Of a stretch of DNA of 64,000 nucleotides, positions 8,695 through 54,005 are shown piece after piece. The stretch is from NCBI GenBank assembly GCA_002269645.1, contig NIVC01002164.1, forward strand, positions 62,001-126,000, given 5' to 3'. The position numbers were made by a program, and so were the translations under genes. Within the stretch, counting starts at the first letter, position 1, and each line of letters starts with the position of its first letter. The DNA is from Macrostomum lignano. Its lineage: Eukaryota. The notes beneath the pieces are model-generated. The model was given only the letters and a program-made list of their open reading frames with translations, made no database searches and was not told the origin of the DNA.

Positions 8695-10032
8695 CTAGGG
8701 TCGTCAGAAAAGTTATGTGTATTAGAGAATAGCTCAGCTCTATGAATAGCTGAAGAGTTGGGGTTTTAGCCATAGATATATACATATATAAAGAGTCGCT
8801 AGCTTCAGTTTTAGAGCACCATATCATTTCTAGCCAAAATAGCAGTAATTTTTCAACCACACCCATGGCGCATTCCGTCCCGCGAGAGACTTTTTCTAAA
8901 CGCGACAATCGAGCGATCATATTGAGTTTCATGTCCTTCAGGGGCGTTCAGCAACCGAGATTTTTGAAGAAATGCGGCAGACCATAGGAGACTTTTGCCC
9001 ATCTTACGATTCGCCGCTGGGCTATTGCCATTCGCAACGGTAAAGAAGACCTCGACGACAAGCCACGCAGTGGACGACCAACGAGTGCTCGGACTGACAG
9101 CCTGGTGAGTCAGGTGGAGGCAGCCGTGCTGCAGGACCGGAGACTGACCACCAGGCAGCTGGCTGATGCCATAGGGGTGTCCCACGACTCAGTCCACAAG
9201 ATCCTGACCGAGGACCTTGGGATGCGCAAGGTCTGTGCCAAGTGGGTGCCGCATCTGCTCACTGACGATCAGCAGGCTCGGCGGGTCGCCATGTGCGCAT
9301 CCAACCTGCAGCGGTGTCGGTGGGAGGGCACGGCGTTCTTGCAGAGGATCGTTGCCTGCGACGAAACCTTGTCGCATTCTTGGGAGGCGGAGTTGAAGCG
9401 GCAGAGAGCCAAATGGTGCAGGCCAGGTTCTCCGCGACCTCAAAAGGCCATCCGGAGCATCGGCCAGCTGAAGGTCATGCACGTGACTTTCTTCGACCGG
9501 AGGGTCTGTTGTTCAATCAGCCTGTGCCAGTGGGGCAGACGGTCAATGGTGATTTCTACCTGTCGGTTCTGGTGAAAGTTCGGCGTGCCATTCGGGACAA
9601 AAGGCCTGCACTTCACGCGGCTGGCCCGATTCTGCTTCACGACAACGCAGCCCCGCACCGAAAGCAAAGCGTGCTGGCTACGATCGAGTCGTGGGGGTGG
9701 GAAATTCTTCCGCATCCGCCTTATTCCCCGGACTTAAGTCCATGCGACTTTTTCCTCTTCCCTCGCATCAAGGAGTCGATGCGAGGCCAGCGTTTCAGCA
9801 CAGAGGAAGACGTGAATCAGGCCTACAAGGCTGGCATTGCCGCCGTGACGAACAATGGCATGACTACAGGCATTGACGGGCTGGTGCGGCGTTGGGAGAA
9901 GTGTATTGAAGCTGAGGGCTCATACTTTGAGTGAATAGATGTTAAGGAAGACATTTGTAACTTTTCATGTTTCTACTGTTTATCGTTCTCAAGTTATTAC
10001 AATATACACAGAACTTTTCTGACAACCCTGAG
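8695..10032 (+). mobile_element. Mariner (Tc1/mariner, D,D34D) element with frameshifted transposase
   Basis: Imperfect ~28-bp TIRs (CTAGGGTCGTCAGAAAAGTT at 8695; reverse complement near 10003-10032) with TA on the left. Transposase ~8866-9934 has WVPHLL, ACDET and HDNAAPH...YSPDLSPCD with 34 residues between the last two Asp. Several frameshifts. Confidence 0.93.
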
Positions 10033-13756: not shown

Positions 13757-16700
13757 TCATGGCTCCACAGGCAGCATTGGAATGCTGGGATCGGCAGCCT
13801 CAGTCTTGAGCGAAGCCTTCTGCGGCTGCGGCTGCTGCTGCAGCATCCCGGCGCCTCTGTTGCTGGCCAGGCTGTCGAACCGCCTTCCGGGCCCTCCCAG
13901 AGCTGCGGCACCTCCGTCGCCGCTTTTCCGGCCGAAGCAGCGCCGAAACGTCAGCCGGAACTGGTGCCGGAAGTTGCTGCTGAACACGGTGTACAGCAGC
14001 GGGTTCACAGCGGAATTGGCGTACACCATCGCCATGGTGATCACCTGGGCGCTGTCCCGCCGGATGGGATGGAAGTCGATGATGTTGAACAGGACCTCCA
14101 GCAGCTTGGACAGGTAGCACACAAAGTACACGGCAACGCAGGCGATCAGCATCTTCACCACCTGCTTGCGCCCGGCCGTGCTGCTCGCTTCGTTGTTTTT
14201 CCTCGGCTGGCTCTGGTCTCGGCCAGGCCCGCCGCCCTGACCGCCGCCGCCGCCGCCGAACAGGGCGAGGGTCATCCGCCTGTACAGCACGATCTGCAGG
14301 CCCAGCGGCAGGAAGTAGAAAAGGCAGATCTCGGCGGCGCCGACCCACTTCATCGCGGCCTCGTGCTCCTGCCTGGTGGCGCCGTACTTGGCGAAGCAGC
14401 GCAGCCGGCCGCCCGGCGACTGCGGCACCACGGCGAGGAAGGCGAGGCTCTGGCTGGCCAGGGCGAGGCCGAGCAGCCAGCAGGCCAGGATGCTCAGCAG
14501 GGCGCGGCGGCGGGAGAACAGCAGGTGGGCGCGCATCGGGTGCACGATGGCCACGTAGCTGCGGGTGCGGTGGGCCGGACCTGCATGTACTGGCTGACAC
14601 CGCCTCTGACACCCCACACCGGTCACTAGCTGTGTCACTGACTCCCCACACCGGTCACTTGCTGCGTCACTGACACCCCACACCGGTCACTTGCTGTGTC
14701 ACTGACACCCCACACCGGTCACTTGCTGTGTCACTGACTCTCCACACCGGTCACTTGCTGCGTCACTGACACCCCACACTGTTCACTTGCTGTGTCACTG
14801 ACACCCCACACTGGTCACTTGCTGGGTCACTGACACCTCACGCTGGTTACTTGTTGGGTCACTGACACCCCACACTGGTCACTTGTTGGGTCACTGACAC
14901 CCCACACTGGTCACTTGCTGGGTCACTGACACCTCACACTGGTTACTTGTTGAGTCACTGAACCCCACACTGGTCACTTGCTGGGTCACTGACACCTCAC
15001 ACTGGTTACTTGTTGAGTCACTGACACCCCACACTGGTCACTTGCTGGGTCACTGACACCTCACACTGGTTACTTGTTGGGTCACTGACACCCCACACTG
15101 GTCACTTGCTGGGTCACTGATACCCCACACTGGTCACTTGCTGTGTCACTGACACCCCACACTGGTCACTTGCTGGGTCACTGTTACCCCACACTGGTCA
15201 CTTGCTGTGTCACTGATACCCCACACCGGTCACTTGCTGTGTCACTGACACCCCACACTGGTCACTTGCTGGGTCACTGATACCCCACACCGGTCACTTG
15301 CTGTGTCACTGACACCCCACACTGGTCACTTGCTGGGTCACTGATACCCCACACTGGTCACTTGCTGGGTCACTGATACCCCACACTGGTCACTTGCTGT
15401 GTCACTGATACCCCACACCGGTCACTTGTTGTGTCACTGACACCCCACCCATCGTTGCCTAGATCGAGATCACGCTTATTTTCGTAGGACTTTTTCTTAT
15501 CTATTTTAATAATGACACTCAACTGCTACAGAGAAATAGCTAAACAATGTTCAGCAGAATCTGTCAGCAAACTTGAATTTTCTAAAAGTTCCAGGAAACG
15601 AAAGGAAAAGAAAACCCAGGACATCCGTTGCAACTTTTGCTGAAGACAGAAAGCCCCCAGTCTGTCAGCGCTCTGCTTCCGCCAGCTCAAGCAGAGCTGA
15701 CAGTTCGTCCTCGTGACTCCCAACCCACCCTTTCTGCAGCACAGAATCTCCGCCAGTCTGGTGCGTGGGATCTGCTTGGCTGCCTAATGGGACTTCTGCG
15801 GCCCTCCTTTTCCTTTTTCCCCAAAGCCGAAGCATAAATACATATCTATTCTCAAGTAAGGATTCTGCACCAATGACTCAACTCGATTGCCTGGATTCTC
15901 TAAATAATTGATAAACTGCCCATACTCATTCTCAATGATTTACGCTCTACACTGATTCCCATATTCATTTTGAGAGCATTGTTCGGGGTAGATGTTCCTC
16001 AACTCCTTCGAGTACTACTCAGCTGAAAACAAGTTCCTGAGCGTAGGGAGCCCCATTTTCCGGAGACTTCGGAGCCTGACTAATGGATTGGCGAACTGCC
16101 GCCAGAATCCGCCAGATAGAGGAGGGTTCTGGCCTGGCCCTGTAAGATTTCAACTTCCTGATGGTCTCTGCTGGCTCCGCTCGAATTTCAAATCCCGAAC
16201 TTCTCCCCAGGGACTGTGAGATTTTGGCGGAGAAAAGCCGGAGCTCCGATTTCTACTCGTCTTCTTAAACTTTTCTCGGTCGGGAAGGGGACATTGCGAG
16301 ATTGTTCCTCGTTTTCTTGAAGCTCTGGCTTCTTGCAAGGCTGTTTTAGCAGCTCAGATCAAACGTCAATGCATGTAGCAATGAATGTTGGACTGAGTTT
16401 TAAATGAGTCTTAGATGATTTGACCAGATGAGGCCAGATGAGACACTGGAGAAGGCCTTCCAAGAACTCCGTGACATGATGTACGAGCTACGGTCGGAGC
16501 GCATGTCTTCGGCCTTTTTTATTCTGAACTGGGAAAGCTTCAAGGATATCAAAAGAATCTTTTCGATCTCGGTTGCCGAGCGGGGAGCGGAGCCGCTGTG
16601 TTTTTTATCAGCCGATGGGGCAGCGCAGGGGAGGCTGCAGAGGAAGCCATCAGGCTGATGAATTATTGACTGGCGATTCTAGCTGCAACACAGAATCAAT

Positions 16701-23544: not shown

Positions 23545-25414
23545 ATGCAAACTGGCAATCCAACCCTTCAAAATTTGGGCTTGGATAGCGACTCAGATGA
23601 CGAATCATACGTGACTGCATCTGGTACCAGTGGAGGCTCCTCTGATGAGCAGAGTGACCTTGAGGAGGTCCAGATTGTGAATCCGCCAGACAACATCGAA
23701 GATAACTGGCATGATACCACTCCGGAAACGGATCATCGGCCCAACCCACTTCCCGAGTTTCTCGGCTTGCCTGGTCTGCATCCGGATTTTCTTGTGCCGG
23801 ACAACATCGAAAATGGTGTGGCTGCCATCCTTGGTCAGTTTCTTCCCGACAGTCTGCTGCAAAGTTTGTGCGACTGGACAAACGCCAGATCAGACAGAGC
23901 TGTCACGCAAATTCAACAAGAAAACGGAGAGCTGCCATGGAAGCTCCTAAATTGGAAGCCATGCAACTTGAATGAAATGAAGAAGTTTATCGGAATTCTG
24001 CTGCACATGGGAGTAGTGCAGAAGCCAGATATTAGCATGTATTGGTCAAGCGATCTTATGTATCATCAGGACTTCTTCCACCATGAGTCATGTCTGTCGC
24101 GTAACAGGTTTCAGCTCACCATGACCTGGTTTCGCTGCTACGATTGCACGGATGTGAACGAAGCTGATCCGCTTTGCAAGATCAGACCTTTTTTGAACAT
24201 ATTTCTGTTGACGAGTCATTGCTATTTTACAAAGGTAGGCTCCACTTTCTTCAGTACATGCCAAACAAAAAGGCAAAGCTCGGCATCAAGCTGTATTGTC
24301 TAGCCGAATCGAACAGCGGCTATTTGTGGAACTTTCTGATCCACTCCACTGCGGCCCAAAACAACCGGTTGGAACTTTCTGATCCACTCCACTGCGGCCC
24401 AAAACAACCGGTTGGAACTTTCTGATCCACTCCACTGCGGCCCAAAACAACCGGTTGGAACTTTCTGATCCACTCCACTGCGGCCCAAAACAACCGGTTG
24501 GAACTTTCTGATCCACTCCACTGCGGCCCGAAACAACCTGTTCGGCCAGGATGCGCAGCAGCTGTCGCTCTCGGAACGCATTGTCGTAGAACTGTCTCGG
24601 GATATCTTGGACCTCGGGCACAGGATCTTTTGTGACACCTGGTTTTGCTCGGCATGGCTCGCCGACTGGTTGCTCCAGAGAATCTCTGTTGACAGGCACA
24701 GTGCGAGCACAACGCGGCGTTCCCACGGCTCTGAAGCAGCAGTTGTTGCACCCACCATCCAACGCCTTTTCTAGGCGTGGGGATCTGCTTGCTGTGAAGA
24801 TTGTGGATCGGCGAGCCTCTGGCCTAAAGACCGTGTACATGCTAGACAGTGCCGGCTCGGCCAACTGTGTGCAAGTTACAAGGGTTCAGCGAGGCGGTCA
24901 GGAGCAGCAACTGCTGAAGTCTCAGACAGCTCTAGACTACAATCACAGCATGGGAGGAGTGGACAGGATGGACGCTAGTTGTGAGCCCTACAAGACAAGT
25001 AGAAGAACGCAGAAGTGGTTTTTCAAGCTGGCCTCCTATCTCTTGCTGCAACTTGTTCGCAACTCCTTTATTGCCTGTAAGCACATTGGCGGTTCCCGCA
25101 TGTTCTTGCACTATTTAGAAGCATGTCAGCGAATTTTAGTCTGCGATACCGGCGTTGGGCGCTTGCCAGGGGAAGGCTCCCCCAGCAGCAGCAGCAGCAG
25201 CAGCAGCACCTCGAGCAAAATGTTGCTGCTGCGCTGCATCTGCCAACGCGCTTGCCAGCTACTGCCACACAGCGACACCCAACAATGCACTGTAGAATTT
25301 GCAGCAATGCTGGCCTGCAGAAAGCGAACTGCCTTTCTCTGCGCCGCTTGCAACGGGCAGCCAAGCTTGTGCCTTGAGCCGTGCTTCAGAGCATGGCACG
25401 AGGCCCAAAACTAA
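23545..25414 (+). mobile_element. Decayed piggyBac-family (PGBD, DDE_Tnp_1_7) transposase
   Basis: Acidic N-terminus, NEMKKFIGILLHMG, LSRNRF, ISVDES (D1), GIKLYCLAES, HRIFCDTWF (D2), TGTVR, YNHSMGGVDRMD (D3) and a C-terminal CRIC...CAAC..LCLEPCFRAWH Cys-rich domain. At least three frameshifts plus an internal tandem amplification. TTAA/TIR ends not found. Confidence 0.9.
24328..24538. repeat. 43-bp tandem amplification (5 copies) inside the piggyBac transposase
   Basis: GGAACTTTCTGATCCACTCCACTGCGGCCCAAAACAACCGGTT at 24328, 24371, 24414, 24457 and 24500. Confidence 0.95.
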
Positions 25415-27717: not shown

Positions 27718-28315
27718 CATAGCAGACAGTAGATAGCAGACAGTAGATAGTAGACAGTAGATAGCAGACAGTAGATAGCAGACAGTAGATAGCAGACAGT
27801 AGATAGCAGACAGTAGATAGCAGACAGTAGATAGCAGACAGTAGATAGCAGACAGTAGATAGCAGACAGTAGATAGCAGACAGTAGATAGCAGACAGTAG
27901 ATAGCAGACAGTAGATAGCAGACAGTAGATAGTAGACAGTAGATAGCAGACAGTAGATAGCAGACAGTAGATAGCAGACAGTAGATAGCAGACAGTAGAT
28001 AGCAGACAGTAGATAGCAGACAGTAGATAGTAGACAGTAGATAGCAGACAGTAGATAGCAGACAGTAGATAGCAGACAGTAGATAGTAGACAGTAGATAG
28101 CAGACAGTAGATAGCAGACAGTAGATAGCAGACAGTAGATAGCAGACAGTAGATAGCAGACAGTAGATAGCAGACAGTAGATAGCAGACAGTAGATAGCA
28201 GACAGTAGATAGCAGACAGTAGATAGCAGACAGTAGATAGCAGACAGTAGATAGCAGACAGTAGATAGCAGACAGTAGATAGCAGACAGTAGATAGCAGA
28301 CAGTAGATAGCAGAA
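27718..28315. repeat. 14-bp minisatellite (AGATAGCAGACAGT)n
   Basis: Directly visible; source of the spurious ORF 27684-28433. Confidence 0.97.
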
Positions 28316-29216
28316 GGTGAATACAGTGAAAATTTACTAAGTGAATGGGATGCCAGATGAAGCGCACTATTATTGAGTTCGGAAGCTTAAAAGCTCTTTC
28401 ATTCATTTCATCAGGTGATATGATTAGTTGCAAATTCTCATAATTTAGCTCTGTCTTTTAAAAGTAACTGTTCTCATAGCCTGCTTCCAGTGCCGAAATC
28501 CCCCTGCAAGCAAGCTAAAGCCAGTAATATTGGTCTTTTAATCAATTGCTTCGTTAATTTACAATCCCCAGTTAGCCTCCCCCTGCTGAGACACATCCGC
28601 ATGCAGTCCAGCTGAGCAGCCCGGGCAGCCCACCTGTTGAGCGAATCCTGCAGCCGGAGGCAACCCAGCCGTCCAATCAGGGTCTCGAGAGGAGGCGACA
28701 CGTTTAGCCTAAAAGCTTGGCAACTGGCGGGGTTCTCAGCAGCTACTTTGCTCCGACCGAGGCTCTGGTCTGATCTGTTATACAAAAAACTCGATTTTCA
28801 AGCAGCACCTGATCTCCGCAATGTCACTCGGCATCAACAGGTAATCCATTGCTTAAGACAAATCGAACTTATCGTAAAACACGAGTTTTTTTAAGTCCGA
28901 AGCTTGCAAACTGTTTCAGAGTGTTGATCTGCACACCGCTACTGGCTGGCCTTCTCCTGACATGCTGCATTCTGACTGTTCACCTGGGTGAGCTGCTGGG
29001 CAGGGACTGATGGATGAACTCATTACAGCCCTACCAATCTGGAGTCGGGTTTCACCCGCAACTCGATCTCTCGCTCGCAATAAGCGACCATCTTGAACGC
29101 GAAATCGTGCTCAAAAATCATTTGCCGAGTTCAGGGAAAGGGGGGCGCCTGGCACTGAGCCGGTCAAAGCACTGCTCTCCACCACGTTTTGTTGTGTCGG
29201 AGCAATACAGCGAGAA

Positions 29217-29502
29217 TTTAATAATTTCAGAAACTGCGGAGGCTGCCCCGAACCCTCGGGCTCGCTCGAACTCGCAGGGGGATCGGCTGGAGGGTGAGGA
29301 GCGGCTCCTGATCTGTGCGGTTGCTGGGGTCTTTGTTTTATCGTGCTTCTGTACAGAACCCCCACCCCGATATTGGCAGATCTGATCGAACTTGAGAATG
29401 AGCAGAGCTCGAATTCGCAGCAATCGGATGGGTGAGGCGAATCAATCAAATTTATCGATCTGACTCGATCAACAAACCAATCAGTCCAAATGGTTTGATC
29501 AG

Positions 29503-29558
<56 letters not shown>

Positions 29559-29564
29559 CCAATT

Positions 29565-29618
<54 letters not shown>

Positions 29619-29664
29619 CCAATTAATCAATCAATCCATCAATCAATCAATCAATCAATCAATT

Positions 29665-29700
<36 letters not shown>

Positions 29701-29716
29701 CATCAATCAACCAATT

Positions 29717-29811
<95 letters not shown>

Positions 29812-29816
29812 TATTT

Positions 29817-29861
<45 letters not shown>

Positions 29862-29961
29862 CCGCACCGGCATCCGCAGCTCCGATGAGTCGATGGCAGA
29901 GCTGATGCAGAAGCTGAGTCGTCTCGACCACCTGAGCAAGCGGTTCGTCACTGACTGGTAG
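29217..29961 (+). CDS. Putative 3'-terminal exons of an unidentified plus-strand gene
   Basis: Phase-compatible GT-AG exons ~29231-29293, ~29356-29430 and 29880-29961 read ...TPTPILADLIELENEQSSNSQQSDG|SDESMAELMQKLSRLDHLSKRFVTDW*. No family recognised and no upstream structure established. Confidence 0.35.
29503..29860. repeat. (AATC)n microsatellite
   Basis: Directly visible. Confidence 0.98.
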
Positions 29962-30374
29962 CCGCGAGAGACGCTCACCAGTGCTGACGAATAATTTGAA
30001 AAATTCAAACACGGAACGTCACACAGTGTCTCAAACGAGAGACTACCCAGTCACAATTCCGCTCTCCCAGAGTTCGACTTTCACATTGAGAGCAAAATAA
30101 AATCCAAGTAGAGTTTCAGACTTGTCAACCTGCACACAATTAAAATCACGTCTTTATTATTAGTTATTTTGTTTATTTGATTTCGAAGAAATTCAATTTT
30201 GACTAAGGAGGCAAGTAAAACTGAGAGGCAAACTGAGGGACTGCGGGGCGATTCTGACAACAGCGAAGAAACATCAGTCAGTTTACCTGAGCTTGGCTTG
30301 CTTAACAACTTGTGTAGTAAAATTGACTGGTTAATATTGACCAAGTCTCTGTGTTGATCTTGATAATCTTATTG

Positions 30375-32210
30375 TTTATCTCAGTTGTTCTCATAGTTTA
30401 TCTCAACTGTTCTCGTAGTTTATCTCAGTTGTTCTCATAGTTCATCTCAACTGTTCTCATAGTTTATCTCAACTGTTCTCGTAGTTTATCTCAGTTGTTC
30501 TCATAGTTCATCTCAACTGTTCTCGTAGTTTATCTCAGTTGTTCTCATAGTTCATCTCAACTGTTCTCGTAGTTTATCTCAGTTGTTCTCATAGTTCATC
30601 TCAACTGTTCTCGTAGTTTATCTCAACTGTTCTCGTAGTTTATCTCAACTGTTCTCATAGTTTATCTCAACTGTTCTCATAGTTCATCTCAACTGTTCTC
30701 ATACTTTATCTCAACTGTTCTCATAGTTTATCTCAACTGTTCTCATACTTTTTCTCAACTGTTCTCATAGTTTATCTCAACTGTTCTCATAGTTTATCTC
30801 AACTGTTCTCGTAGTTCATCTCAACTGTTCTCGTAGTTTATCTCAACTGTTCTCATAGTTTATCTCAACTGTTCTCATAGTTCATCTCAACTGTTCTCGT
30901 AGTTTATCTCAACTGTTCTCATAGTTCATCTCAACTGTTCTCGTAGTTTATCTCAACTGTTCTCATACTTTATCTCAACTGTTCTCATACTTTATCTCAA
31001 CTGTTCTCATAGTTTATCTCAACTGTTCTCATAGTTTATCTCAACTGTTCTCGTAGTTCATCTCAACTGTTCTCGTAGTTTATCTCAACTGTTCTCATAG
31101 TTTATCTCAACTGTTCTCATAGTTTATCTCAACTGTTCTCGTAGTTTATCTCAACTGTTCTCATAGTTTATCTCAACTGTTCTCATAGTTTATCTCAACT
31201 GTTCTCATACTTTATCTCAACTATTCTCATAGTTTATCTCAACTGTTCTCATAGTTTATCTCAACTGTTCTCGTAGTTTATCTCAACTGTTCTCATAGTT
31301 TATCTCAACTGTTCTCATAGTTTATCTCAACTGTTCTCGTAGTTCATCTCAACTGTTCTCGTAGTTTATCTCAACTGTTCTCATAGTTTATCTCAACTGT
31401 TCTCATAGTTTATCTCAACTGTTCTCGTAGTTTATCTCAACTGTTCTCATACTTTATCTCAACTGTTCTCATAGTTTATCTCAACTGTTCTCATACTTTA
31501 TCTCAACTATTCTCATAGTTTATCTCAACTGTTCTCATAGTTTATCTCAACTGTTCTCGTAGTTTATCTCAACTGTTCTCATAGTTTATCTCAACTGTTC
31601 TCATAGTTTATCTCAACTGTTCTCGTAGTTCATCTCAACTGTTCTCGTAGTTTATCTCAACTGTTCTCGTAGTTTATCTCAACTGTTCTCATAGTTTATC
31701 TCAACTGTTCTCGTAGTTTATCTCAACTGTTCTCATACTTTATCTCAACTGTTCTCATACTTTATCTCAACTGTTCTCATACTTTATCACAACTGTTCTC
31801 ATATTTCAACTGTTCTCATACTTTATCACAACTGTTCTCATATTTCAACTGTTCTCATAATTTATCTCAAATGTTCTCATACTTTATCTCAACTGTTCTC
31901 ATACTTTATCTCAACTGTTCTCATATTTCAACTGTTCTCATACTTTATCACAACTGTTCTCATATTTCAACTGTTCTCATACTTTATCACAACTGTTCTC
32001 ATATTTCAACTGTTCTCATAATTTATCTCAACTGTTCTCATACTTTATCACAACTGTTCTCATATTTCAACTGTTCTCATACTTTATCACAACTGTTCTC
32101 ATATTTCAACTGTTCTCATACTTTATCTCAAATGTTCTCATACTTTATCTCAACTGTTCTCATAATTTATCTCAACTGTTCTCATAGTTTATCTGAGCTG
32201 TTCTCATAGT
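30375..32210. repeat. 22-bp minisatellite (AGTTTATCTCAACTGTTCTCAT)n, about 80 copies
   Basis: 22-bp period (30601 vs 30623); the unit degenerates toward the 3' end. Confidence 0.97.
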
Positions 32211-32289
32211 TTTGGTCTCAGTCACTCTGTTTCATTTCCTTTCAGCAGCAATCCCAAAAAACTGTTTCCAACCAAGTCGAGTCATCAAA

Positions 32290-38150
<5,861 letters not shown>

Positions 38151-38664
38151 ACATACCGACAGGAAGAGTAAGAGGCAGTCTCTCTTTGGAAGAAATCAGT
38201 ATAATTTTTGTCTTGTCAGCAAATCCCTGATAAATACCTGCTGGTCGGTTTGATAGGCGGGTCCGCTGCCGCAGCCACCCGGCAGCTGAGTTACTCACTC
38301 AGGGCTCCTGCATTAATTTTTCATGCCGGGGAGGTCATGGCAGGGCAGCCGCACAGCCCCCTGTATTAGTTCCTCAGCAGCCCCAGAGACCATTCTGAGC
38401 GCAGGGCGTTGGCATCCCCTGATCTATTATTTATGCAGGAACCCAGCCCGGGCCAATCAAACTGCTCTTCAGATTCTTTTATAGGTTCCTCATCGGCCGA
38501 TCAAAGTTCTTAATTACTGTTGAAGGGATCCTGACGAGCCTCTGCATTGGAACCCCGTCTGGATGTTTCTCTTTTCGAGGTTCAAGCAGCTTCTCAAGCA
38601 AATTGCAGCTCGGCGACGCAACAAAAAAGTACATTGGATTCTTAAAACCCCAACTTATGCATTA

Positions 38665-39970
38665 ATGTACATCCCCACTCAATCCGATTCCACTTTGACC
38701 AGGCAGACCGCAATGTACATCCCCACTCAATCCGATTCCACTCTGACCAGGCAGACCGCAATGTACATCCCCACTCAATCCGATTCCACTCTGACCAGGC
38801 AGACCGCAATGTACATCCCCACTCAATCCGATTCCACTCTGACCAGGCAGACCGCAATGTACATCCCCACTCAATCCGATTCCACTCTGACCAGGCAGAC
38901 CGCAATGTACATCCCCACTCAATCCGATTCCACTCTGACCAGGCAGACCGCAATGTACATCCCCGCTCAATCCGATTCCACTCTGACCAGGCAGACCGCA
39001 ATGTACATCCCCACTCAATCCGATTCCACTCTGACCAGGCAGACCGCAATGTACATCCCCGCTCAATCCGATTCCACTCTGACCAGGCAGACCGCAATGT
39101 ACATCCCCACTCAATCCGATTCCACTCTGACCAGGCAGACCGCAATGTACATCCCCACTCAATCCGATTCCACTCTGACCAGGCAGACCGACCGCAATGT
39201 ACATCCCCACTCAATCCGATTCCACTCTGACCAGGCAGACCGCAATGTACATCCCCACTCAATCCGATTCCACTCTGACCAGGCAGACCGCAATGTACAT
39301 CTCCGCTCAATCCGATTCCACTCTGGCCAGGCAGACCGACCGCAATGTACATCCCCACTCAATCCGATTCCACTCTGACCAGGCAGACCGCAATGTACAT
39401 CCCCACTCAATCAGATTCCACTCTGGCCAGGCAGACCGACCGCAATGTACATCCCCACTCAATCCGATTCCACTCTGGCCAGGCAGACCGACCGCAATGT
39501 ACATCCCCACTCAATCCGATTCCACTCTGGCCAGGCAGACCGACCGCAATGTACATCCCCACTCAATCCGATTCCACTCTGACGAGGCAGACCGACCGCA
39601 ATGTACATTCCCACTCAATCCGATTCCACTCTGACCAGGCAGACCGCAATGTACATCCCCACTCAATCCGATTCCACTCTGACCAGGCAGACCGCAATGT
39701 ACATCCCCACTCAATCCGATTTCACTCTGACCAGGCAGACCGCAATGTACATCCCCACTCAATCCGATTCCACTCTGACCAGGCAGACCGCAATGTACAT
39801 CACCACTCAATCCGATTCCACTCTGACCAGGCAGACCGCAATGTACATCCCCACTCAATCCGATTCCACTCTGACCAGGCAGACCGCAATGTACATCCCC
39901 ACTCAATCCGATTCCACTCTGACCAGGCAGACCGCAATGTACATCCCCACTCAATCCGATTCCACTCTGT
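38665..39970. repeat. 48-bp minisatellite (ATGTACATCCCCACTCAATCCGATTCCACTCTGACCAGGCAGACCGCA)n
   Basis: About 27 copies, some with a 4-bp CCGA insertion; source of many spurious ORFs. Confidence 0.97.
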
Positions 39971-40299
39971 AAACTATTTACGCAGTTTGTGTCACGGCGG
40001 CAGAATTGGGAGCCCAAGTGGGTTGCTCCAAGCCAGCGATAAGATAATATATAGGATTTCTTGGGACGAGGGCTAAGACTTAATCAGTTGTTATTCCTGC
40101 AGATTTTCTCTCAAGAATTCGGACACGGCTGTGACGGCTGCATCAAAACTTTTGTTGCTGAGTAAGTTAGTGCTCAGGCAGTATCATTATTGAAAAAATA
40201 AGACATGAAAAATTTTAATCCTACAATACTGACTGCCAATTGCCCTTGGAACTTTTGTTTACTAAAACAAAATATCTATTAAGACCCCCGTGCAATATC

Positions 40300-47549: not shown

Positions 47550-50500
47550 TCAGCGCCTCTCCGGCCGGATGAAGCCCTTGTTGGTGGTGGACGCGTACAG
47601 CAGGTCATCGCGCGATATCTCGTTGAAGCTGAGCACCCGGTGGCCCTCCTCGTTGTAGAAGCAGACGGCCGGATTGCGCAGCTTCAGTCGCTTGGTGGCG
47701 GCCGCCAGCAGGGCCTCCAGCGAGTCGCCAAAGACGCTCTCCGGCTCGCCGACCGCTCGCCCGTTCTCGAAGACGCGGACGCGCCGACTGTCGTAGATCG
47801 GCACCAGCGGTGGCGACGGCTTCGCGTTGGCGCCGTGCAGCGGCGGCCCGAACGGGTCCACGCCGACCAGGGGGTGGCTGCGCGCCTGCACGTGGAAGTT
47901 GGTGGCGCCGGGGCCGTACTGGCGCTTGGCGCGGCCCCAGTTGGCTTTGATCTCCACGGTCTCCAGCGCCGACCCGGGTGGCTGGAAGGGCTCGCCGCTG
48001 GACACGCAAAGTAGCTGGTCCCGGCTCAGCTGCCCGATGTCGTGTACGTCTTTGCCGTCGAGGCAGAAGAGAATCTTGGCCGGCTTTCGCAAGCCCAGTC
48101 GAGTTGTCGCCGTGTCCAGAACCTGGTGGATGGTCTCAGCCCAGACTGTCGTTGCCGTCTTCGGATCCTCGCCGTTGACAAACACGCGCAGCCGGAGCAT
48201 GCTGGACTGTCGGTACAGCTGCCTGTCGAAGTCGAACGCGGGACGGCGTGGCTGAGACTGCTTGGCTGCGTGCTTCTCCCGGATCTTCGCCTCCTTGCCC
48301 TCCAGCTCGCTTATCTCGCGTTCAACCATCACTTCCTCGCCTTTGGGCGTCTGCCAGCCGCCCTCAACGACTACCGGGTTCTGGGGGTCGGTGGTTGACC
48401 GAAACGTGCCCGGCTCCTGGGCCTGCAGTCGGCGGCCCTGCATCATCTTGAGTATGTGCTTGTCGGCATCCTTGCTGTTGAGAACCTGGCGCAGGTCCTT
48501 GCGTTGTTGAGCCATCTTGCGGAATTCTCTGTGAGCCTGGTGCAGCGGCACGAAGGCCTCTCCAGTGGAGGCCCAGAGCTCGACGACAACTTCATGTGGG
48601 TCTGGCGCTGGTTGCTCGTCCTTCAGCACCGCGGATTCGGCCTGAAGCGACTCTGCAGCATCTGCTGCTGGATCAGCGCCGGCCTCCTCCGCTGTATTAG
48701 AGTCAGCAGGGGCAGCCGCCTCGCTTGGCATCGCCTGAGCTTCTCTCAACTCGCCAGCATCTCCGCTTTCGTCATCATTGTCCACCTCGATGTCGATGGA
48801 CACGGTGATGCTGATCTCCACGTGCAACGACGCGTGGGTTCTCTGGCCCTTCGGCTTCGCGGCCGACTTTTTGTACCAGGCGTAGTCGGCCGCGATCTTG
48901 GTGGAGTTGACGAACTCCTCGTGCTCCTCGCGGACCAGCGTGTCCAGGGGAACGTAGCTCGTGGCCAGCACCGTCTCCTCCGGCATTCGGACCAGGTCGA
49001 ACTTCATCAGGCTGAACTTCTCCTTAAAGAACCGGCGCAGAATCGGCAGCTCTGATTTGAGTTGAATCTCGCGCTTCTCGCCCTCGAACGCTTCCTCGTT
49101 GATGAACGGGTCTGTGCAAATCGTCTGACCGAAGATGCTGTACCGCACAATCATTTCGGTGTCCCCCGAGTCGAGTCTCTCCTGCGGTAGGATCTCGTCC
49201 AGGAAGTTAATGGAGTAGAGACTAATGGACATTGTGTAGGCAGTTGGCGTTGTAAAGTTTGAGCCAATCACGAAATATTTCTGCTTGAGTCTGGGCTCCA
49301 AACTGTCGCGTCTACTGATGACAGACTTCTCGGGACTGCGGGGCGAATTCTCTGGTGTTGGGTCGACCTTAGGAGTCCCTGACTTTTCCACCTCGTCTCG
49401 AATTTCGTCCATCTCCGGCTGCAGGCGGCCTTCTTCGATTTCCTTCTGCCGCCTACGCACCTGCTCAGCGTGAGTGGCGCACCAGCTGCGCAGGTCGTCC
49501 AAGTCCAGCACCGGGGTTCCGTCTTCCAGGTAGAGCTTGCGCACCGCCCAGGAAATGCGCAGCTTTGAAGCGCACTGGTCCATGATGCCCTGCAGGCTGG
49601 TGCCGTAGACCGGCACGGGCTTGCACAGCCGGCCTTCGCCGTTGCGATAAGCCAGGACGCGGATCGGCCGAGGAGTTTGTGCTTCGGACAGGCGGTTAGA
49701 AATGGCCTTGACCGACAGCTTGTTCCGCTGCACCTGGATCTCATCCTCCCAGCGCTTCAGCGTGGCCTTGTCCTCTCCTTCAGCCAGGTCAATCTTATCG
49801 TTGAGTACTGCAAAGGAGCCACGCTCCTTCAGTCCGAGCTCGTTGGCCCTGCCAAACGCGCAGGCAAAGTCCGTCCGGGCGCCCGGGGCGATCTTTTGGA
49901 GCTTGTACTTTCCGCGGAGAGACTTGGCACAGGAGACGCACACTGAGCATTTCTTAACTCGTGACTCCTGTTGCCTGGTCTCCAGGTAGGCTATGTAACC
50001 CGGCTGATCGAGGCTCTCGCCCTTAACGGTGCTCACATAGTAGGTGCAGCAGCCAGACTGGTTCGCCGAGGTAACGGCGACGTCCAAAGCGCTTGTCGCA
50101 AAGCAGCAGATGGTCGACCGCTGGCTGTCAACGGAGAACAGCTGGTGAGCCCGACCGAACTGATATGCCTTCAGCGGCTGCACAGTCAGCATGGAAGACT
50201 CGATGTCGACTGTCTCAGATGAGAATCGTGTCACAGTGGGCAGCTTGACTGTGAGAACATTACCTGGCCGGTACTTCAGAGCGATTGAGCCGTTGTTATT
50301 CAGCTGCCAGCGCTGGAATAAATTGTCTGGCGCCCGCTTTTCCAGTGACACTTCAAGGACGCGAGCGTCTGGGCTGGCAGCGGCAGTCAGGACGAGATTG
50401 GAATTTTCTCTAGCCGAGATGAACCCGTCTTCCAGAACAAACTGCTTCAGACTCAAACTCTTGTTTTGACGATGTTTTTTCGCCGGCGCCGGGTCTGGCG

Positions 50501-53500
50501 CCTGCCGTTCAGCGCTATCATCAGCGCTTTGATCCAAGTCGTTGTTCACAATTCTCTCCCACGGCCACTTCAGACCGTCGCGTCTCACCTTCTCAGCGTC
50601 ACTGCGGCGGCAGGCCCGCTGGTGAGCAGTGAGTCCTTCGTCCTCCTCTTCATCCTCATCCTCGTTGCTGGAATCAAAGTTCGCATCTGGCGGGCTCTCC
50701 GACTCTTGGAGCTGCTTCGCGCGGCGCTCTCGCTTGGTCAGCAGGTCCCGGGACACGCCGAGCTTCGAGCCGGCGGTCAAACTTTCGGCTGTGATCACCA
50801 GTGCCGCAGTTTGCTTCAAGGCCACGAAGCTGCGAATCTTGTCAACATCTTCAGCTAGCTTGACGAGCATCGATCGGGCTTCCAGCTGCTGCTTCGAGTA
50901 CTTCGGATCCGACCACGGCTCGCCAACGGAGACGTACAGTTTTTGGTCTTTTTCAAGCTTCTCCAATGATTCGTGCTCAATTCCATTCTCATCGAACAGT
51001 CGCCTTGCCGCAGAGGACAGGCCGAGGAGGTTGGTGCAGCACTCCAGGAAGATCTTGAACTCCACCTGCTGCACAGTCATCTCTGAGCAATGGGGAACGT
51101 GAATGTAGTCATCAACTACAAATGAATCCGTCTCTTCCTGACTGCTTGCTGCCTGATGCTTCCGGCTACCCTTTTTCTTGCCCTGCTTCTTCTGCTTCTT
51201 CATGTTGGTCATGTCCGGGGCTGTGACGAACACGCCGAACTGCTCCTTTCTCTCGCCGTTTTTCAAGCAAAAGAATCGTTTTGGGCTCTCAGTCTCTGGC
51301 TTGAACTCTTTGAGCGGAGGAGCGAAAGCCAGCATGTGGCACTCCAGCGGCCAGTCAAGATCCTCAATCAGGTCACCATTCTTGTCAGTTGGCCAGAGTA
51401 GAGCCAGTTTGCTCCATTTGGGATCCTTGTGCTTTTCAGACTTCTCATTGCCCTCGCCGGCCTTCCTCCAGGTGCTAAAGTTTTCGAACTTGCTAAGGCG
51501 CAGGCCGAATCGTTGGTACTTATCCAGCTGCTCCCGCAACTTGCCGCTCACATCGTCACGTGACGAAAGGGGCTCACAGGCGGCTAGCATGTTGCGATAG
51601 TTCAAGCTGGATTCATACAGCTCATTCTTGGGCCTTGTGTGGGGTTCGTCCAACAAGCCACCCAGGTACGTAAGCACAAAACCTGGCTCCATCTGGGAGT
51701 AAATCAGTCCATCTCTGCCGAACTCCCACTTTTGCGCGGCCGGAACTCGGTCTTCTTCCAGAGGAGTGAACTGAACGAGCCGGCCTCTCATGGTCGCACC
51801 CTGCAAGTCGGTCTGAATCTCTGCATCGACCAAGGTCAGAGCGATTTTGAAATTCTTCAGGGTAATCTGGCCACTCTTGTGCACAACCCAGATCTGAGAA
51901 ACGCCCGCTCGAGGCCACACCGGCCACACGTGCTTCGCCTTGTCGCCACCGTCACCAGCGTTTGGAGCCTCTTTTGGCTGTCGCTGCGTCCCAACTACGG
52001 GCTCCACGAACAGGCAGAGTTGCCTATTCTTTGAGTTCGTCAGGAAGCAACCATCGTCTGGCACAGATTCCTCTGGTAGCTTCTCCTCTTCCTGAGGCTC
52101 TTCCTCCTCTTCGTTCCTCGGCTCCGGCTCGGGCAGAAGGTGCTGCTCGATGTTGTCTGGAACGCCGAGCTGCGCTCGCCAGGTTGTCTTCTCATCGATC
52201 TGCGGCATCTCGGATCGAACGATGGCAAACCTGCGGTCTCCTTTCTTCCACTCGGTCACCTTGCTGATCTCGGCCTGTAGGCAGTAGGTGAACGGGTCAA
52301 TCCAGTCTTCGCCGTGAGAAATCCAGATTTGTTGCTCCTGCTCAATTGTCATGGCATCCGTGATCTCAGTTCCAGTCTTAGTGAACACCCGCCGAACAAG
52401 AATGCCCTTTGACTTGCTGCTCTTGTGGGCTAGCAGAGAATTAGCTGATAAGCTGTCCAGAAAGCGTTGAAAAATTATCTGCCTGCGGTTTTTGTCTTTC
52501 TTAAGACCACGCGACGCCTCGTGAATGTTAAAGAATGCGTTGACAGGATTGGAGTCCGTGCCATTCATGAACACGATCACTCGAAGACCTGGGCTGCCAG
52601 ACACCAGAGAGTGGTTCTCTGGAAGAGCCCTAATGTGCTTCATTGTAAATTTGCTTCCCTCTTCTTGCTCATTTTTTGCTTCTGGCTCAACGTACTCGAG
52701 CATGAGCTCGTGATTCTCCAGGAAAGCATTGTACTGCCTGATCTTGTCGCCCTCTTTGTCCAACTCCGACTGAATTTCGTCGTCGGTCATCGACAGAATC
52801 TTTTTATCGGTCAGCTTCTTGTCCTTAGCCAGAGACTCTCTGTCATCCGAGTTGTAGACCAATTTGAGCTGGCTTCGATAGTCTCGGGACAATTTCCTCT
52901 TTTGTTTTACGAATCGAATAACGTCCCGGAGGTATTCCTCGACTCCCATTGGGCTGATGTCCTCGCCCTTGCTGGCCCACACAGGTCCCAAAAGGGGAGT
53001 GCCATGAGAATTATTCAGCAGAGGATCAATTTCAGGAATGTCTGCCTCAATATTCTCTACTTCAACTCCATCATTTAAAAGAATTCGCTTGATGTGCTGA
53101 CCAAAGTTGAACTTCAGCGTACAGTTGTACTTGAGTTCGTCAAGATTCGAAACATTGGCTAGTATTTCGATTCCGTTGATTCCTTTTCCATTAGGAAAGA
53201 TGAGTATTCTCCTGCGAGTCGCCTGTTCACTCAAGCCGCGTGGGGTCGACACGGGTCTGGTTGCTTCTCTCTCCCTGTCACTGGGCAGATTGATGCCGTT
53301 CAGAGTCCATTGGACATCAGCTCCCAAATTGAGTCTCTTCTCTAGTAGTTTTGCTGGGTCTTTAAAAGCTTCGCCAACGGAGACATATATTTCAGTTCCT
53401 CTTGGAATTGTTGCAGTTCTCGGAACTTCTTTTCCAGAACTCAAGAACAGCTTCCTAGCAGCACTAGATAATCTGAGCTTTTTGGTACACTGTTCAAGCA

Positions 53501-54005
53501 GCTTTTCAAAATTTGGCGCCGAAACACGAGCACTTTTGCTTCTATCACCGTTTATAAAGGCAGTGACGACATAAACGGAAGGAACTTGCAAGTATGCTGG
53601 AACGCTGGACTTAGTTCTTCTGCTCCTTGAATGGGAGCTTCGACGTTGGCTCCCGTGGGTTAAATCTGCTTCGTTGATTTCCTCACTGTCGATGCTTTTG
53701 TTTCTTGTCCTTTGTTTTGACTCACCTTCGGTTAATCCGTTTCCAGCGACTGAAAGACGAGTCTTCCGTTGAATACCTGTCGGACCTGAAGATCTTGATC
53801 TCGCACTGTTGCACTTACGATCTTTAGGGTCTTGACTACTGTCCGACTGGCGTGGCAGAAGCCCTCGATGCGTTGCTAGGATGTTTGTATGCTTTAGCGG
53901 AAGCTTATACGGCGATGAGTCACATTGTTTGACTATGGTCTGACTTGTAGAAAGTTCCTTAATGTATTGCGTAAGGAGAAGGTCATCGATCGTCCTTGTT
54001 CCCAT
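47550..54005 (-). CDS. DCDC1: Doublecortin-domain and ricin-B lectin repeat protein, DCDC1(DCDC5)-like, 2151 aa, single uninterrupted ORF
   Basis: About seven DCX-like units (e.g. VTAFING...LEQCTKKLRLSSAARKLF...YVSVGE.FKDP, repeated) interleaved with ricin-type QxW motifs (SQIWVVH, AQKWEFG, FQRWQLN). This architecture matches DCDC1. A 6.45-kb stop-free ORF. Confidence 0.85.
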   Translation of the reverse strand: MGTRTIDDLLLTQYIKELSTSQTIVKQCDSSPYKLPLKHTNILATHRGLLPRQSDSSQDPKDRKCNSARSRSSGPTGIQRKTRLSVAGNGLTEGESKQRTRNKSIDSEEINEADLTHGSQRRSSHSRSRRTKSSVPAYLQVPSVYVVTAFINGDRSKSARVSAPNFEKLLEQCTKKLRLSSAARKLFLSSGKEVPRTATIPRGTEIYVSVGEAFKDPAKLLEKRLNLGADVQWTLNGINLPSDREREATRPVSTPRGLSEQATRRRILIFPNGKGINGIEILANVSNLDELKYNCTLKFNFGQHIKRILLNDGVEVENIEADIPEIDPLLNNSHGTPLLGPVWASKGEDISPMGVEEYLRDVIRFVKQKRKLSRDYRSQLKLVYNSDDRESLAKDKKLTDKKILSMTDDEIQSELDKEGDKIRQYNAFLENHELMLEYVEPEAKNEQEEGSKFTMKHIRALPENHSLVSGSPGLRVIVFMNGTDSNPVNAFFNIHEASRGLKKDKNRRQIIFQRFLDSLSANSLLAHKSSKSKGILVRRVFTKTGTEITDAMTIEQEQQIWISHGEDWIDPFTYCLQAEISKVTEWKKGDRRFAIVRSEMPQIDEKTTWRAQLGVPDNIEQHLLPEPEPRNEEEEEPQEEEKLPEESVPDDGCFLTNSKNRQLCLFVEPVVGTQRQPKEAPNAGDGGDKAKHVWPVWPRAGVSQIWVVHKSGQITLKNFKIALTLVDAEIQTDLQGATMRGRLVQFTPLEEDRVPAAQKWEFGRDGLIYSQMEPGFVLTYLGGLLDEPHTRPKNELYESSLNYRNMLAACEPLSSRDDVSGKLREQLDKYQRFGLRLSKFENFSTWRKAGEGNEKSEKHKDPKWSKLALLWPTDKNGDLIEDLDWPLECHMLAFAPPLKEFKPETESPKRFFCLKNGERKEQFGVFVTAPDMTNMKKQKKQGKKKGSRKHQAASSQEETDSFVVDDYIHVPHCSEMTVQQVEFKIFLECCTNLLGLSSAARRLFDENGIEHESLEKLEKDQKLYVSVGEPWSDPKYSKQQLEARSMLVKLAEDVDKIRSFVALKQTAALVITAESLTAGSKLGVSRDLLTKRERRAKQLQESESPPDANFDSSNEDEDEEEDEGLTAHQRACRRSDAEKVRRDGLKWPWERIVNNDLDQSADDSAERQAPDPAPAKKHRQNKSLSLKQFVLEDGFISARENSNLVLTAAASPDARVLEVSLEKRAPDNLFQRWQLNNNGSIALKYRPGNVLTVKLPTVTRFSSETVDIESSMLTVQPLKAYQFGRAHQLFSVDSQRSTICCFATSALDVAVTSANQSGCCTYYVSTVKGESLDQPGYIAYLETRQQESRVKKCSVCVSCAKSLRGKYKLQKIAPGARTDFACAFGRANELGLKERGSFAVLNDKIDLAEGEDKATLKRWEDEIQVQRNKLSVKAISNRLSEAQTPRPIRVLAYRNGEGRLCKPVPVYGTSLQGIMDQCASKLRISWAVRKLYLEDGTPVLDLDDLRSWCATHAEQVRRRQKEIEEGRLQPEMDEIRDEVEKSGTPKVDPTPENSPRSPEKSVISRRDSLEPRLKQKYFVIGSNFTTPTAYTMSISLYSINFLDEILPQERLDSGDTEMIVRYSIFGQTICTDPFINEEAFEGEKREIQLKSELPILRRFFKEKFSLMKFDLVRMPEETVLATSYVPLDTLVREEHEEFVNSTKIAADYAWYKKSAAKPKGQRTHASLHVEISITVSIDIEVDNDDESGDAGELREAQAMPSEAAAPADSNTAEEAGADPAADAAESLQAESAVLKDEQPAPDPHEVVVELWASTGEAFVPLHQAHREFRKMAQQRKDLRQVLNSKDADKHILKMMQGRRLQAQEPGTFRSTTDPQNPVVVEGGWQTPKGEEVMVEREISELEGKEAKIREKHAAKQSQPRRPAFDFDRQLYRQSSMLRLRVFVNGEDPKTATTVWAETIHQVLDTATTRLGLRKPAKILFCLDGKDVHDIGQLSRDQLLCVSSGEPFQPPGSALETVEIKANWGRAKRQYGPGATNFHVQARSHPLVGVDPFGPPLHGANAKPSPPLVPIYDSRRVRVFENGRAVGEPESVFGDSLEALLAAATKRLKLRNPAVCFYNEEGHRVLSFNEISRDDLLYASTTNKGFIRPERR

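What the first reader, a model, noticed from the sequence alone, without database searches (positions are those of the whole stretch)
48790..49250. CEP120-like C2 domain apparently inserted into a DCDC1-like protein
Between the fifth and sixth DCX-like units the ORF reads YTMSISLYSINFLDEILP...MIVRYSIFGQTICTDPF...FEGEKREIQLKSELPILRRFF...VLATSYVPLDTLV...VEISITVSID. From memory this parallels the CEP120 second C2 domain (DUF3668): FIMSVTIAFATQLEQLIP...FFYYSLLGNDVTNEPF...[21 protein letters not shown]...LGSTEIPLTGLL...VGVSVAL. I do not recall a C2 domain in vertebrate DCDC1. A DCX + ricin + centriolar C2 fusion would be a new microtubule/centriole-binding architecture, plausible in a multiciliated animal.
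Basis: partly seen in the sequence, partly recalled or inferred. Interest (0 to 1): 0.7.

Follow-up and report, generated by a model that had tools for sequence, protein, structure and literature searches.

The report
CEP120-type C2 domain inside flatworm DCDC1
A flatworm (Macrostomum lignano) version of the microtubule-binding protein DCDC1 carries a domain otherwise known from the centriole protein CEP120, placed inside a loop of one of its doublecortin domains; four orthologues from other phyla lack it, so it is a real but lineage-restricted domain gain.

Summary
Residues 1574-1736 of an uninterrupted 2151-aa ORF (window 47550..54005, minus strand) match Pfam PF12416 (DUF3668, "Cep120 protein") at E=3.3e-13 and 50.6 bits (cut-off 26), covering profile positions 9-172 of 176. 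The only solved structures they match are CEP120 C2B (6EWG/H/I).

The host protein is a DCDC1/DCDC5 orthologue with seven DCX or ubiquitin-like units and two weak ricin-like trefoils. The window comes from Macrostomum lignano assembly Mlig_3_7.

The placozoan orthologue and three mollusc orthologues have no such domain. At the same position they have only a 100-255-aa acidic, low-complexity loop.

The C2 domain is not simply between DCX units 5 and 6. It is nested inside unit 5, before that unit's last strand.

A diverged M. lignano paralogue has the same arrangement. There the C2 is the best-conserved stretch (dN 0.20, against 0.64-0.68 in the flanking linkers), so it has been kept by selection.

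The C2 fold could not be modelled (pLDDT about 30). Function is inferred only: a docking module on flexible tethers attached to a microtubule-binding scaffold. I rate it a new variant of a known kind, of moderate interest.

The parts
47550..54005 (-). Uninterrupted 2151-aa ORF (stop codon included): the Macrostomum lignano DCDC1/DCDC5 orthologue.
   Evidence: ORF. PF24478 DCX2_DCDC1 at 7.8e-64 in 6 stretches, PF25510 Ubiquitin_DCDC1 at 5e-39, PF03607 DCX at 1.6e-17; 27-30% identical and collinear with Trichoplax and mollusc DCDC1-like proteins; source assembly GCA_002269645.1 (NIVC01) is M. lignano.
48798..49286 (-). CEP120 C2B-type C2 domain (PF12416/DUF3668), residues 1574-1736. This is the finding.
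   Evidence: E=3.3e-13, 50.6 bits, profile 9-172 of 176. (only PDB matches are CEP120 C2B 6EWG/H/I). (PF12416 positions 10-104 correspond to the O. niloticus C2B fragment). (lowest dN of the long regions compared between paralogues).
49491..49667 (-). First part of DCX unit 5, residues 1447-1505 (IRVLAYRNGEG...LYLEDGTPVLDLDDL).
   Evidence: alone it matches PF24478 profile positions 14-73 only (28.1 bits); beta-beta-alpha-beta-beta at pLDDT about 80; best structural matches are doublecortin domains.
49287..49490 (-). N-side linker, residues 1506-1573: charged, partly helical, poorly conserved.
   Evidence: low-complexity segments; 33% identity between paralogues, dN 0.68; low pLDDT after a helix.
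48594..48797 (-). C-side linker, residues 1737-1804: acidic and Ala-rich, low complexity.
   Evidence: residues 1726-1800 flagged as low complexity; 27% identity, half of the columns gapped, dN 0.64.
48540..48593 (-). Last strand of DCX unit 5, residues 1805-1822 (VVVELWASTGEAFVP).
   Evidence: joining it to the first part extends the PF24478 match to profile positions 14-101 of 105 and raises the score from 28.1 to 37.5 bits; strand at residues 1807-1813, pLDDT about 85; aligned with the conserved VWVSSG motif of orthologues.
52938..53577 (-). DCX units 1 and 2, about residues 144-356.
   Evidence: DCX best stretch at residues 163-196, DCX2_DCDC1 best stretch at residues 261-356.
52299..52589 (-). 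DCX unit 3 (Ubiquitin_DCDC1), residues 473-569.
   Evidence: PF25510 at 5e-39, best stretch residues 473-569, profile 1-94 of 95.
49986..50465 (-). Second ricin-type beta-trefoil-like region, residues 1181-1340. Only sub-threshold in this protein.
   Evidence: Ricin_B_lectin is the top hit but at E=0.073; the equivalent region aligns with Trichoplax residues 1133-1224 (weak ricin hit) and is a significant ricin hit in Gigantopelta (1.1e-09).
51606..52010 (-). First ricin-type beta-trefoil-like region, residues 666-800. Sub-threshold.
   Evidence: E=0.09; oyster orthologues have significant Ricin_B_lectin at residues 727-809.
47586..48200 (-). DCX units 6 and 7, about residues 1936-2140.
   Evidence: KHA-like/DCX-type hit at residues 2094-2137; TUG-UBL1 at residues 1955-1985. 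(alignments with Trichoplax and with the paralogue).

Best explanation
The segment is a genuine, diverged member of the CEP120 C2B-type C2 domain family (Pfam PF12416). It sits in the long, otherwise disordered loop that precedes the last beta-strand of the fifth doublecortin-like domain of the M. lignano DCDC1/DCDC5 orthologue.

Shown:
- the domain match;
- the nested position;
- its absence from placozoan and mollusc orthologues;
- its presence and preferential conservation in a second, anciently diverged M. lignano paralogue.

Inferred:
- The domain was gained in the flatworm lineage before the paralogues split, by insertion into a loop that tolerates length variation.
- It works as a protein-protein docking module, held on two flexible tethers of roughly 65 residues that project from a microtubule-bound array of DCX domains.
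- It thereby adds a partner to the DCDC1 scaffold. By analogy with CEP120 C2B, that partner is probably a distal-centriole or ciliogenesis factor.
- It is unlikely to bind tubulin or calcium itself.
For: - Domain identity: PF12416 at E=3.3e-13, 50.6 bits against cut-off 26, near full-length; the paralogue's copy at E=8.5e-9; the only PDB matches are CEP120 C2B; PF12416 corresponds to C2B (PMC5990496).
- Core residues: the positions aligned to human V194 and A199 are hydrophobic, I1594 and I1599, and I/M in the paralogue.
- Host identity.
- Absence elsewhere: no PF12416 hit at E<=10 in four orthologues. The equivalent stretch is N/D/E/Q-rich low complexity in Trichoplax and about 100 acidic residues in molluscs.
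- Nesting: the PF24478 match extends from profile 14-73 to 14-101 when the two flanks are joined. AlphaFold places a confident strand at residues 1807-1813.
- Not an assembly chimera: the CDS is identical on two contigs with different flanks, and a paralogue on a third contig has the same order.
- Selection: for the C2, dN 0.20 and dS about 1.2. For the linkers, dN 0.64-0.68. Identity is 68% in the C2, 27-33% in the linkers, and 47-52% in the two long paralogue alignments.
- Function by analogy: CEP120 C2B is a monomeric beads-on-a-string module. Its proximity partners are CEP350, centrobin, CP110, TALPID3 and KIF24, and tubulin binding belongs to C2A (PMC5990496). DCDC5 binds dynein and Rab8 (PMC4756281).
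Against: - The beta-sandwich fold could not be confirmed. Both AlphaFold runs gave pLDDT of roughly 25-35 for this stretch, because no alignment depth was available.
- The match to the solved C2B sequence covers only the first 90 or so residues.
- Only four non-flatworm orthologues from two phyla were seen. Vertebrates, other flatworms and other spiralians were not tested, so ancestral presence with repeated loss is not excluded.
- There is no expression, localisation or binding data.
- The paralogue carries at least two frame breaks.
- Alternative splicing that removes the insert cannot be excluded.
Confidence: 0.6

Rival explanations
1. The C2B-like domain is ancestral to DCDC1. It has decayed into the disordered loop seen in Placozoa and Mollusca, so M. 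lignano retains an old architecture rather than having gained a new one.
For: Every orthologue examined has a long insert at exactly this point in DCX unit 5: about 255 residues in Trichoplax and about 100 in molluscs. These could be remnants. Only two other phyla were sampled.
Against: No residual PF12416 signal at E<=10 in any of the four. Their loops are compositionally disordered, with no alignable blocks. Molluscs and flatworms are both spiralians (established phylogeny), so this reading needs at least two independent complete losses against one gain. Literature on human DCDC5 lists only DCX and ricin-like domains.
Confidence: 0.12
2. The domain is a C2 fold, but it acts as a membrane or lipid-binding module. 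It would tether the DCX scaffold to Rab8-type vesicles or to the ciliary membrane, rather than acting as a protein docking site.
For: C2 domains are often membrane binders (PMC5990496). Vertebrate DCDC5 is linked to dynein-dependent transport of Rab8 vesicles.
Against: No match to the classical Ca2+/phospholipid C2 family at E<=10; only PF12416 and one noise hit appear. The closest relative, CEP120 C2B, has proximity partners that are proteins, and no lipid binding was found for it in the paper read.
Confidence: 0.15
3. The stretch is not part of the mature protein. It would be a retained or alternatively spliced segment, or the locus would be a non-functional retrocopy, so the fusion is only apparent.
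For: The whole gene is one 6.4-kb ORF without introns, which is unusual for DCDC1 (human DCDC5 has 29 exons). The paralogue has frame breaks. No transcript data are available here.
Against: The reading frame is open for 2151 codons, in two identical copies. The C2 codons show strong purifying selection at the protein level (dN/dS about 0.17), stronger than the adjoining DCX unit. GC3 of the C2 (0.82) matches the neighbouring coding parts.
Confidence: 0.08
4. The similarity to CEP120 arises by chance or from composition, and the segment is merely an ordered patch in a linker.
For: The fold was not confirmed by modelling. phmmer against 1.8 billion representatives found no relative other than the protein itself.
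Against: A curated-threshold Pfam match over 164 of 176 positions, reproduced in the paralogue. Specific shared motifs with C2B: LDEILP against LEQLVP, YSIFGQ..TDPF against YSLLGN..SEPF, FEGEKR against FEPERA. The threshold needs roughly 45 bits, which CEP120 itself would not reach.
Confidence: 0.03

Closest known systems
CEP120 second C2 domain (C2B; Pfam PF12416/DUF3668; PDB 6EWG, 6EWH, 6EWI)
   Same: Sequence family: above the Pfam cut-off over almost the whole model, and about 30% identity to O. niloticus C2B over the first 90 residues. The core positions equivalent to the ciliopathy residues V194 and A199 are hydrophobic. In both proteins the domain is flanked by long flexible linkers.
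   Different: The host protein is not CEP120: there is no C2A, no C2C and no coiled coil. The score is much lower than for a true CEP120 C2B (50.6 bits over 164 residues, against 161 bits for a 95-residue C2B fragment). It is nested within another domain rather than being one bead in a C2 array.
DCDC1/DCDC5 (doublecortin domain-containing protein 1) of Trichoplax, molluscs and human
   Same: The same order of DCX-like, ubiquitin-like and ricin-type trefoil units. PF24478 and PF25510 are both present. Alignment is collinear over more than 1400 residues. All have a long insert in the last loop of DCX unit 5.
   Different: In the four orthologues examined the loop is disordered filler. Here it carries a folded C2B-type domain. 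The M. lignano gene is a single ORF without introns, and its ricin-type signal is sub-threshold.
Classical Ca2+/phospholipid-binding C2 domains (Pfam PF00168, synaptotagmin/PKC type)
   Same: Presumably the same beta-sandwich superfold, by way of CEP120 C2B (described as PLC-delta1-like topology II in PMC5990496).
   Different: No detectable match at E<=10, and so no evidence for calcium-binding loops.

Membership tests
CEP120 C2B-type domain (Pfam PF12416, DUF3668) | Scores above the curated Pfam gathering threshold over most of the model. | tested here: met
   50.6 bits against a cut-off of 26, E=3.3e-13, profile positions 9-172 of 176. The paralogue's copy scores 36.2 bits.
CEP120 C2B-type domain (Pfam PF12416, DUF3668) | Direct sequence similarity to a solved CEP120 C2B structure. 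| tested here: met
   6EWH/6EWG/6EWI at E=3e-4, and nothing else at E<=10 with the single sequence. The same holds with the two-paralogue profile. The alignment covers only the first 90 or so residues.
CEP120 C2B-type domain (Pfam PF12416, DUF3668) | Eight-stranded C2 beta-sandwich fold. | tested here: inconclusive
   AlphaFold without alignment depth gave pLDDT 32, and about 25-35 for this stretch within the larger construct.
CEP120 C2B-type domain (Pfam PF12416, DUF3668) | Hydrophobic core residues at the positions of human V194 and A199. | tested here: met
   I1594 and I1599 in the window protein, I and M in the paralogue, read from the alignments. Residue roles are taken from PMC5990496.
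CEP120 protein (whole-protein orthologue) | Three N-terminal C2 domains followed by a coiled coil. | tested here: not met
   The host has a DCDC1 architecture and a single PF12416 stretch. Membership is therefore at domain level only.
DCDC1/DCDC5 orthologues | DCDC1-specific Pfam families PF24478 and PF25510, plus DCX. | tested here: met
   7.8e-64, 5e-39 and 1.6e-17 respectively.
DCDC1/DCDC5 orthologues | Collinear full-length similarity to proteins named DCDC1 or DCDC5. | tested here: met
   Trichoplax DCDC5 at E=3e-121 (two-sequence BLASTP alignment, 1e-116). Gigantopelta, Crassostrea and Saccostrea DCDC1-like at about 1e-296 or better.
DCDC1/DCDC5 orthologues | Ricin-type beta-trefoil domain(s) between DCX units. 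| tested here: inconclusive
   Ricin_B_lectin is the top hit in both regions, but only at E=0.07-0.09. The aligned regions are significant in molluscs, at 1e-9 to 1e-11.
DCDC1/DCDC5 orthologues | Microtubule, dynein or Rab8 binding. | not testable with these tools
   Known only from the vertebrate literature.
Classical Ca2+-dependent C2 (PF00168) | Match to the family profile and its calcium-binding loops. | tested here: not met
   No hit at E<=10.

The most novel reading that the evidence does not exclude
The CEP120 C2B-type domain is a portable recognition module for one specific distal-centriole or basal-body ligand. Macrostomum has captured it into DCDC1 to send a large microtubule-bundling DCX scaffold to the basal bodies of its multiciliated epidermis. 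This would be the first occurrence of the domain outside CEP120 in the searches made here, and a natural experiment that could identify the still-unknown ligand of the ciliopathy-mutated C2B domain.
Probability: 0.2. Interest if true: 0.65.

Novelty: new variant of a known kind. Interest (0 to 1): 0.42.

Why it matters
CEP120 C2B is the domain hit by the Joubert syndrome (V194A) and Jeune syndrome (A199P) mutations, yet its direct ligand is still unknown (PMC5990496). A second, independent host protein for the same domain type, kept under selection and attached to a microtubule-binding scaffold, offers a comparison for finding what this domain recognises.

It is also a clean example of domain gain by insertion into a disordered loop inside another domain. 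M. lignano has established transgenesis (PMC5730564), so localisation and deletion tests are practical. If the gain proves restricted to one flatworm lineage, the wider significance is modest.

Tried and rejected
1. Word-indexed homologue search with the 182-aa segment: nothing found.
2. Exhaustive phmmer of the segment against 1.84 billion representatives: only the protein itself, plus a 34-residue match to a 5421-aa protein with Cys-rich tandem repeats. I judged that match spurious. The library-wide threshold is too strict to see CEP120 itself.
3. Full-length homologue search: swamped by low-complexity words, returning only the protein itself and Trichoplax. A query with low complexity removed recovered three molluscs and the paralogue, but no vertebrate or other flatworm.
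4. AlphaFold on the segment alone: unusable, pLDDT 32. The 406-residue construct resolved DCX unit 5 but not the C2. Foldseek on that model returned only weak doublecortin, CIDE-N and ubiquitin-like matches for the DCX part, which says nothing about the C2.
5. Metagenome contig scan for relatives of the C2: none.
6. Literature searches for DCDC1 with C2 domain, for DUF3668, and for DCDC1 with cilia: nothing relevant.
7. GC3 of the insert gives no sign of recent foreign origin.
Full report
**The observation**

The window carries one very long open reading frame on the minus strand, 47550..54005, of 2151 codons. It is by far the longest ORF in the 64 kb.

Pfam assigns the protein to the DCDC1 family:
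- DCX2_DCDC1 (PF24478): 7.8e-64, six stretches.
- Ubiquitin_DCDC1 (PF25510): 5e-39.
- DCX (PF03607): 1.6e-17.
- PF12416 (DUF3668, "Cep120 protein"): residues 1574-1736, E=3.3e-11.

On the 182-residue segment alone, the PF12416 hit is E=3.3e-13 and 50.6 bits against a curated cut-off of 26. It covers profile positions 9-172 of 176, and no other C2 family appears even at E<=10.

Against all PDB sequences, the only matches are three chains of CEP120 (6EWG, 6EWH, 6EWI) at about 3e-4. The paper that deposited them identifies them as wild-type and mutant C2B of Oreochromis niloticus CEP120 (PMC5990496).

The aligned C2B fragment maps to PF12416 positions 10-104 at 4e-47, so PF12416 is the C2B domain.

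**Source**

The exact protein is encoded on two contigs of GCA_002269645.1, accession prefix NIVC01. NIVC00000000 is the Mlig_3_7 assembly of the flatworm Macrostomum lignano.

The window is identical to the locus on NIVC01002164.1. The other contig has an identical coding sequence but different flanks.

**Is the domain a general feature of DCDC1?**

Two homologue searches returned four orthologues from other phyla:
- Trichoplax sp. H2 "DCDC5" (1924 aa).
- DCDC1-like proteins of Gigantopelta aegis (1943 aa), Crassostrea virginica (1903 aa) and Saccostrea echinata (1898 aa).

None has PF12416, either in the precomputed annotation or in my scans at E<=10. All are collinear with the flatworm protein on both sides of the segment.

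At the equivalent position, Trichoplax has about 255 residues of N/D/E/Q-rich low complexity. The molluscs have about 100 acidic residues.

The one paper found that describes human DCDC5 lists only DCX and ricin-like domains (PMC3106376). Searches for DCDC1 with "C2 domain" and for DUF3668 found nothing relevant.

This is the main gap.

**Where exactly the domain sits**

The conserved motif that follows the insert, VVVELWASTGEAF (VWVSSG in orthologues), is the last strand of a DCX-type unit, not the beginning of the next unit.

- The first part of unit 5 (residues 1440-1512) alone matches PF24478 positions 14-73 at 28.1 bits.
- Joined to residues 1803-1840, it matches positions 14-101 of 105 at 37.5 bits.

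An AlphaFold model of residues 1440-1845, built with the orthologue alignment, gave these features:
- beta-beta-alpha-beta-beta for residues 1448-1501, at pLDDT about 80;
- a confident strand at residues 1807-1813, at pLDDT about 85;
- everything in between at low confidence.

Its best structural matches are doublecortin domains, though weakly.

So the C2 domain is nested in the last loop of DCX unit 5. It is held by a charged linker of about 68 residues on one side and an acidic, Ala-rich linker of about 68 residues on the other.

**Evidence that it is real and maintained**

A diverged paralogue lies on a third contig (NIVC01000281.1, locus L003). Its gene model (P0007, 1175 aa) stops early, but tblastn shows that the rest of the gene follows in the same order, including the C2. 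That copy hits PF12416 on its own at 8.5e-9.

| Region compared between paralogues | Amino-acid identity | dN | dS |
|---|---|---|---|
| C2 domain | 68% | 0.20 | about 1.2 |
| First part of DCX unit 5 | 60% | 0.34 | about 1.5 |
| Flanking linkers | 27-33% | 0.64-0.68 | saturated |

The two long tblastn alignments between the paralogues are 47% and 52% identical.

The arrangement therefore predates an old duplication, and the C2 is the most constrained of the long stretches compared. Three loci with the same order exclude an assembly chimera.

The residues aligned to the inward-pointing ciliopathy positions of CEP120 C2B (human V194 and A199) are isoleucines here, and I and M in the paralogue.

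**What could not be shown**

The C2 fold itself could not be shown.

An exhaustive phmmer of the segment against 1.84 billion representatives found only the protein itself and one spurious repeat match. A metagenome scan also found nothing. The domain thus has no close relatives in those collections, but the thresholds are too strict to detect CEP120-level similarity.

**Mechanism (inferred)**

- In vertebrates, DCDC5 binds cytoplasmic dynein and Rab8, and it acts in late cytokinesis (PMC4756281). DCX domains bind microtubules (established knowledge).
- The three C2 domains of CEP120 behave as independent beads on a string.
- In CEP120, C2A binds tubulin.
- C2B does not appear to bind tubulin. 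Its proximity partners are CEP350, centrobin, CP110, TALPID3 and KIF24, with no confirmed direct ligand.

The most likely reading is that the flatworm protein is a microtubule-bound DCX scaffold. It displays a C2B-type protein-docking module on flexible tethers, and so gains a centriole-related or cilium-related partner.

A membrane-binding role is a weaker alternative, since there is no match to classical Ca2+/lipid C2 domains.

**Evolution**

Molluscs and flatworms are both spiralians. One gain in the flatworm lineage, into a loop that already tolerated 100-255 residues of filler, is therefore more parsimonious than complete losses in both Placozoa and Mollusca.

The sampling is thin, and ancestral presence is not excluded.

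The score gap with a true C2B (50.6 bits over 164 residues, against 161 bits over 95) shows that this is not a recent copy of a conventional CEP120.

**Verdict**

1. The domain is nested within unit 5, not between units 5 and 6.
2. It resembles the C2 of CEP120 that does not bind tubulin.
3. The ricin-type signal is only sub-threshold in this protein.

This is a new variant of known kinds: a known domain in a known family, in a new and nested combination. It is of moderate interest, mainly as a handle on the unknown ligand of CEP120 C2B and as a tractable case in a transgenic flatworm model.

Noticed in passing
window 47550-54005 (-): The whole 2151-codon DCDC1-like gene is a single ORF without introns, whereas human DCDC5 has 29 exons (PMC3106376). 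The paralogue on L003 is also essentially collinear. This suggests a retrogene origin or wholesale intron loss in this lineage.
   Followed up: no
window 47550-54005 (-): GC3 rises steadily along the gene, from 0.43 (codons 1-140) to 0.85 (codons 1807-2151). The two linkers flanking the C2 are lower (0.50-0.64) than the C2 itself (0.82).
   Followed up: partly
L003 13400-16100 (NIVC01000281.1): The diverged paralogue changes reading frame near 13500 and near 15600, and has an unalignable gap at 15700-16040. Its deposited gene model (P0007) therefore ends at 1175 aa. These could be real frameshifts (a decaying copy), small introns, or long-read indel errors.
   Followed up: partly
L001 vs L002 (= window): Two contigs carry a 6456-bp coding sequence with zero differences, but their 3-kb flanks do not match position for position. 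This is consistent with a very recent duplication or gene conversion.
   Followed up: partly
window 28000-35930: A dense block of tandem arrays: a 22-bp unit x85 at 30367-32212; 17/26-bp units at 32780-34144; 14-bp, 11-bp and 21-bp units; and ATCA and TAGA microsatellites. These explain the extreme skews seen.
   Followed up: partly
window 23545-25414 (+) and 9293-9934 (+): Split ORFs of a piggyBac-type transposase (DDE_Tnp_1_7, 1e-18 and 1e-10, with the zinc finger), and a weak mariner/DDE_3-like remnant. These are probably decayed transposons.
   Followed up: no
window 13757-14683 (-): An ORF matching the C-terminal two thirds of a rhodopsin-family 7TM receptor (7tm_1, 6.9e-22). It is probably one exon of a GPCR gene.
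   Followed up: no
window 34000-40100: A GC-rich stretch (0.53-0.63) with several 220-305-aa ORFs on both strands. These have no Pfam match or only sub-threshold ones. Their nature is not determined.
   Followed up: no
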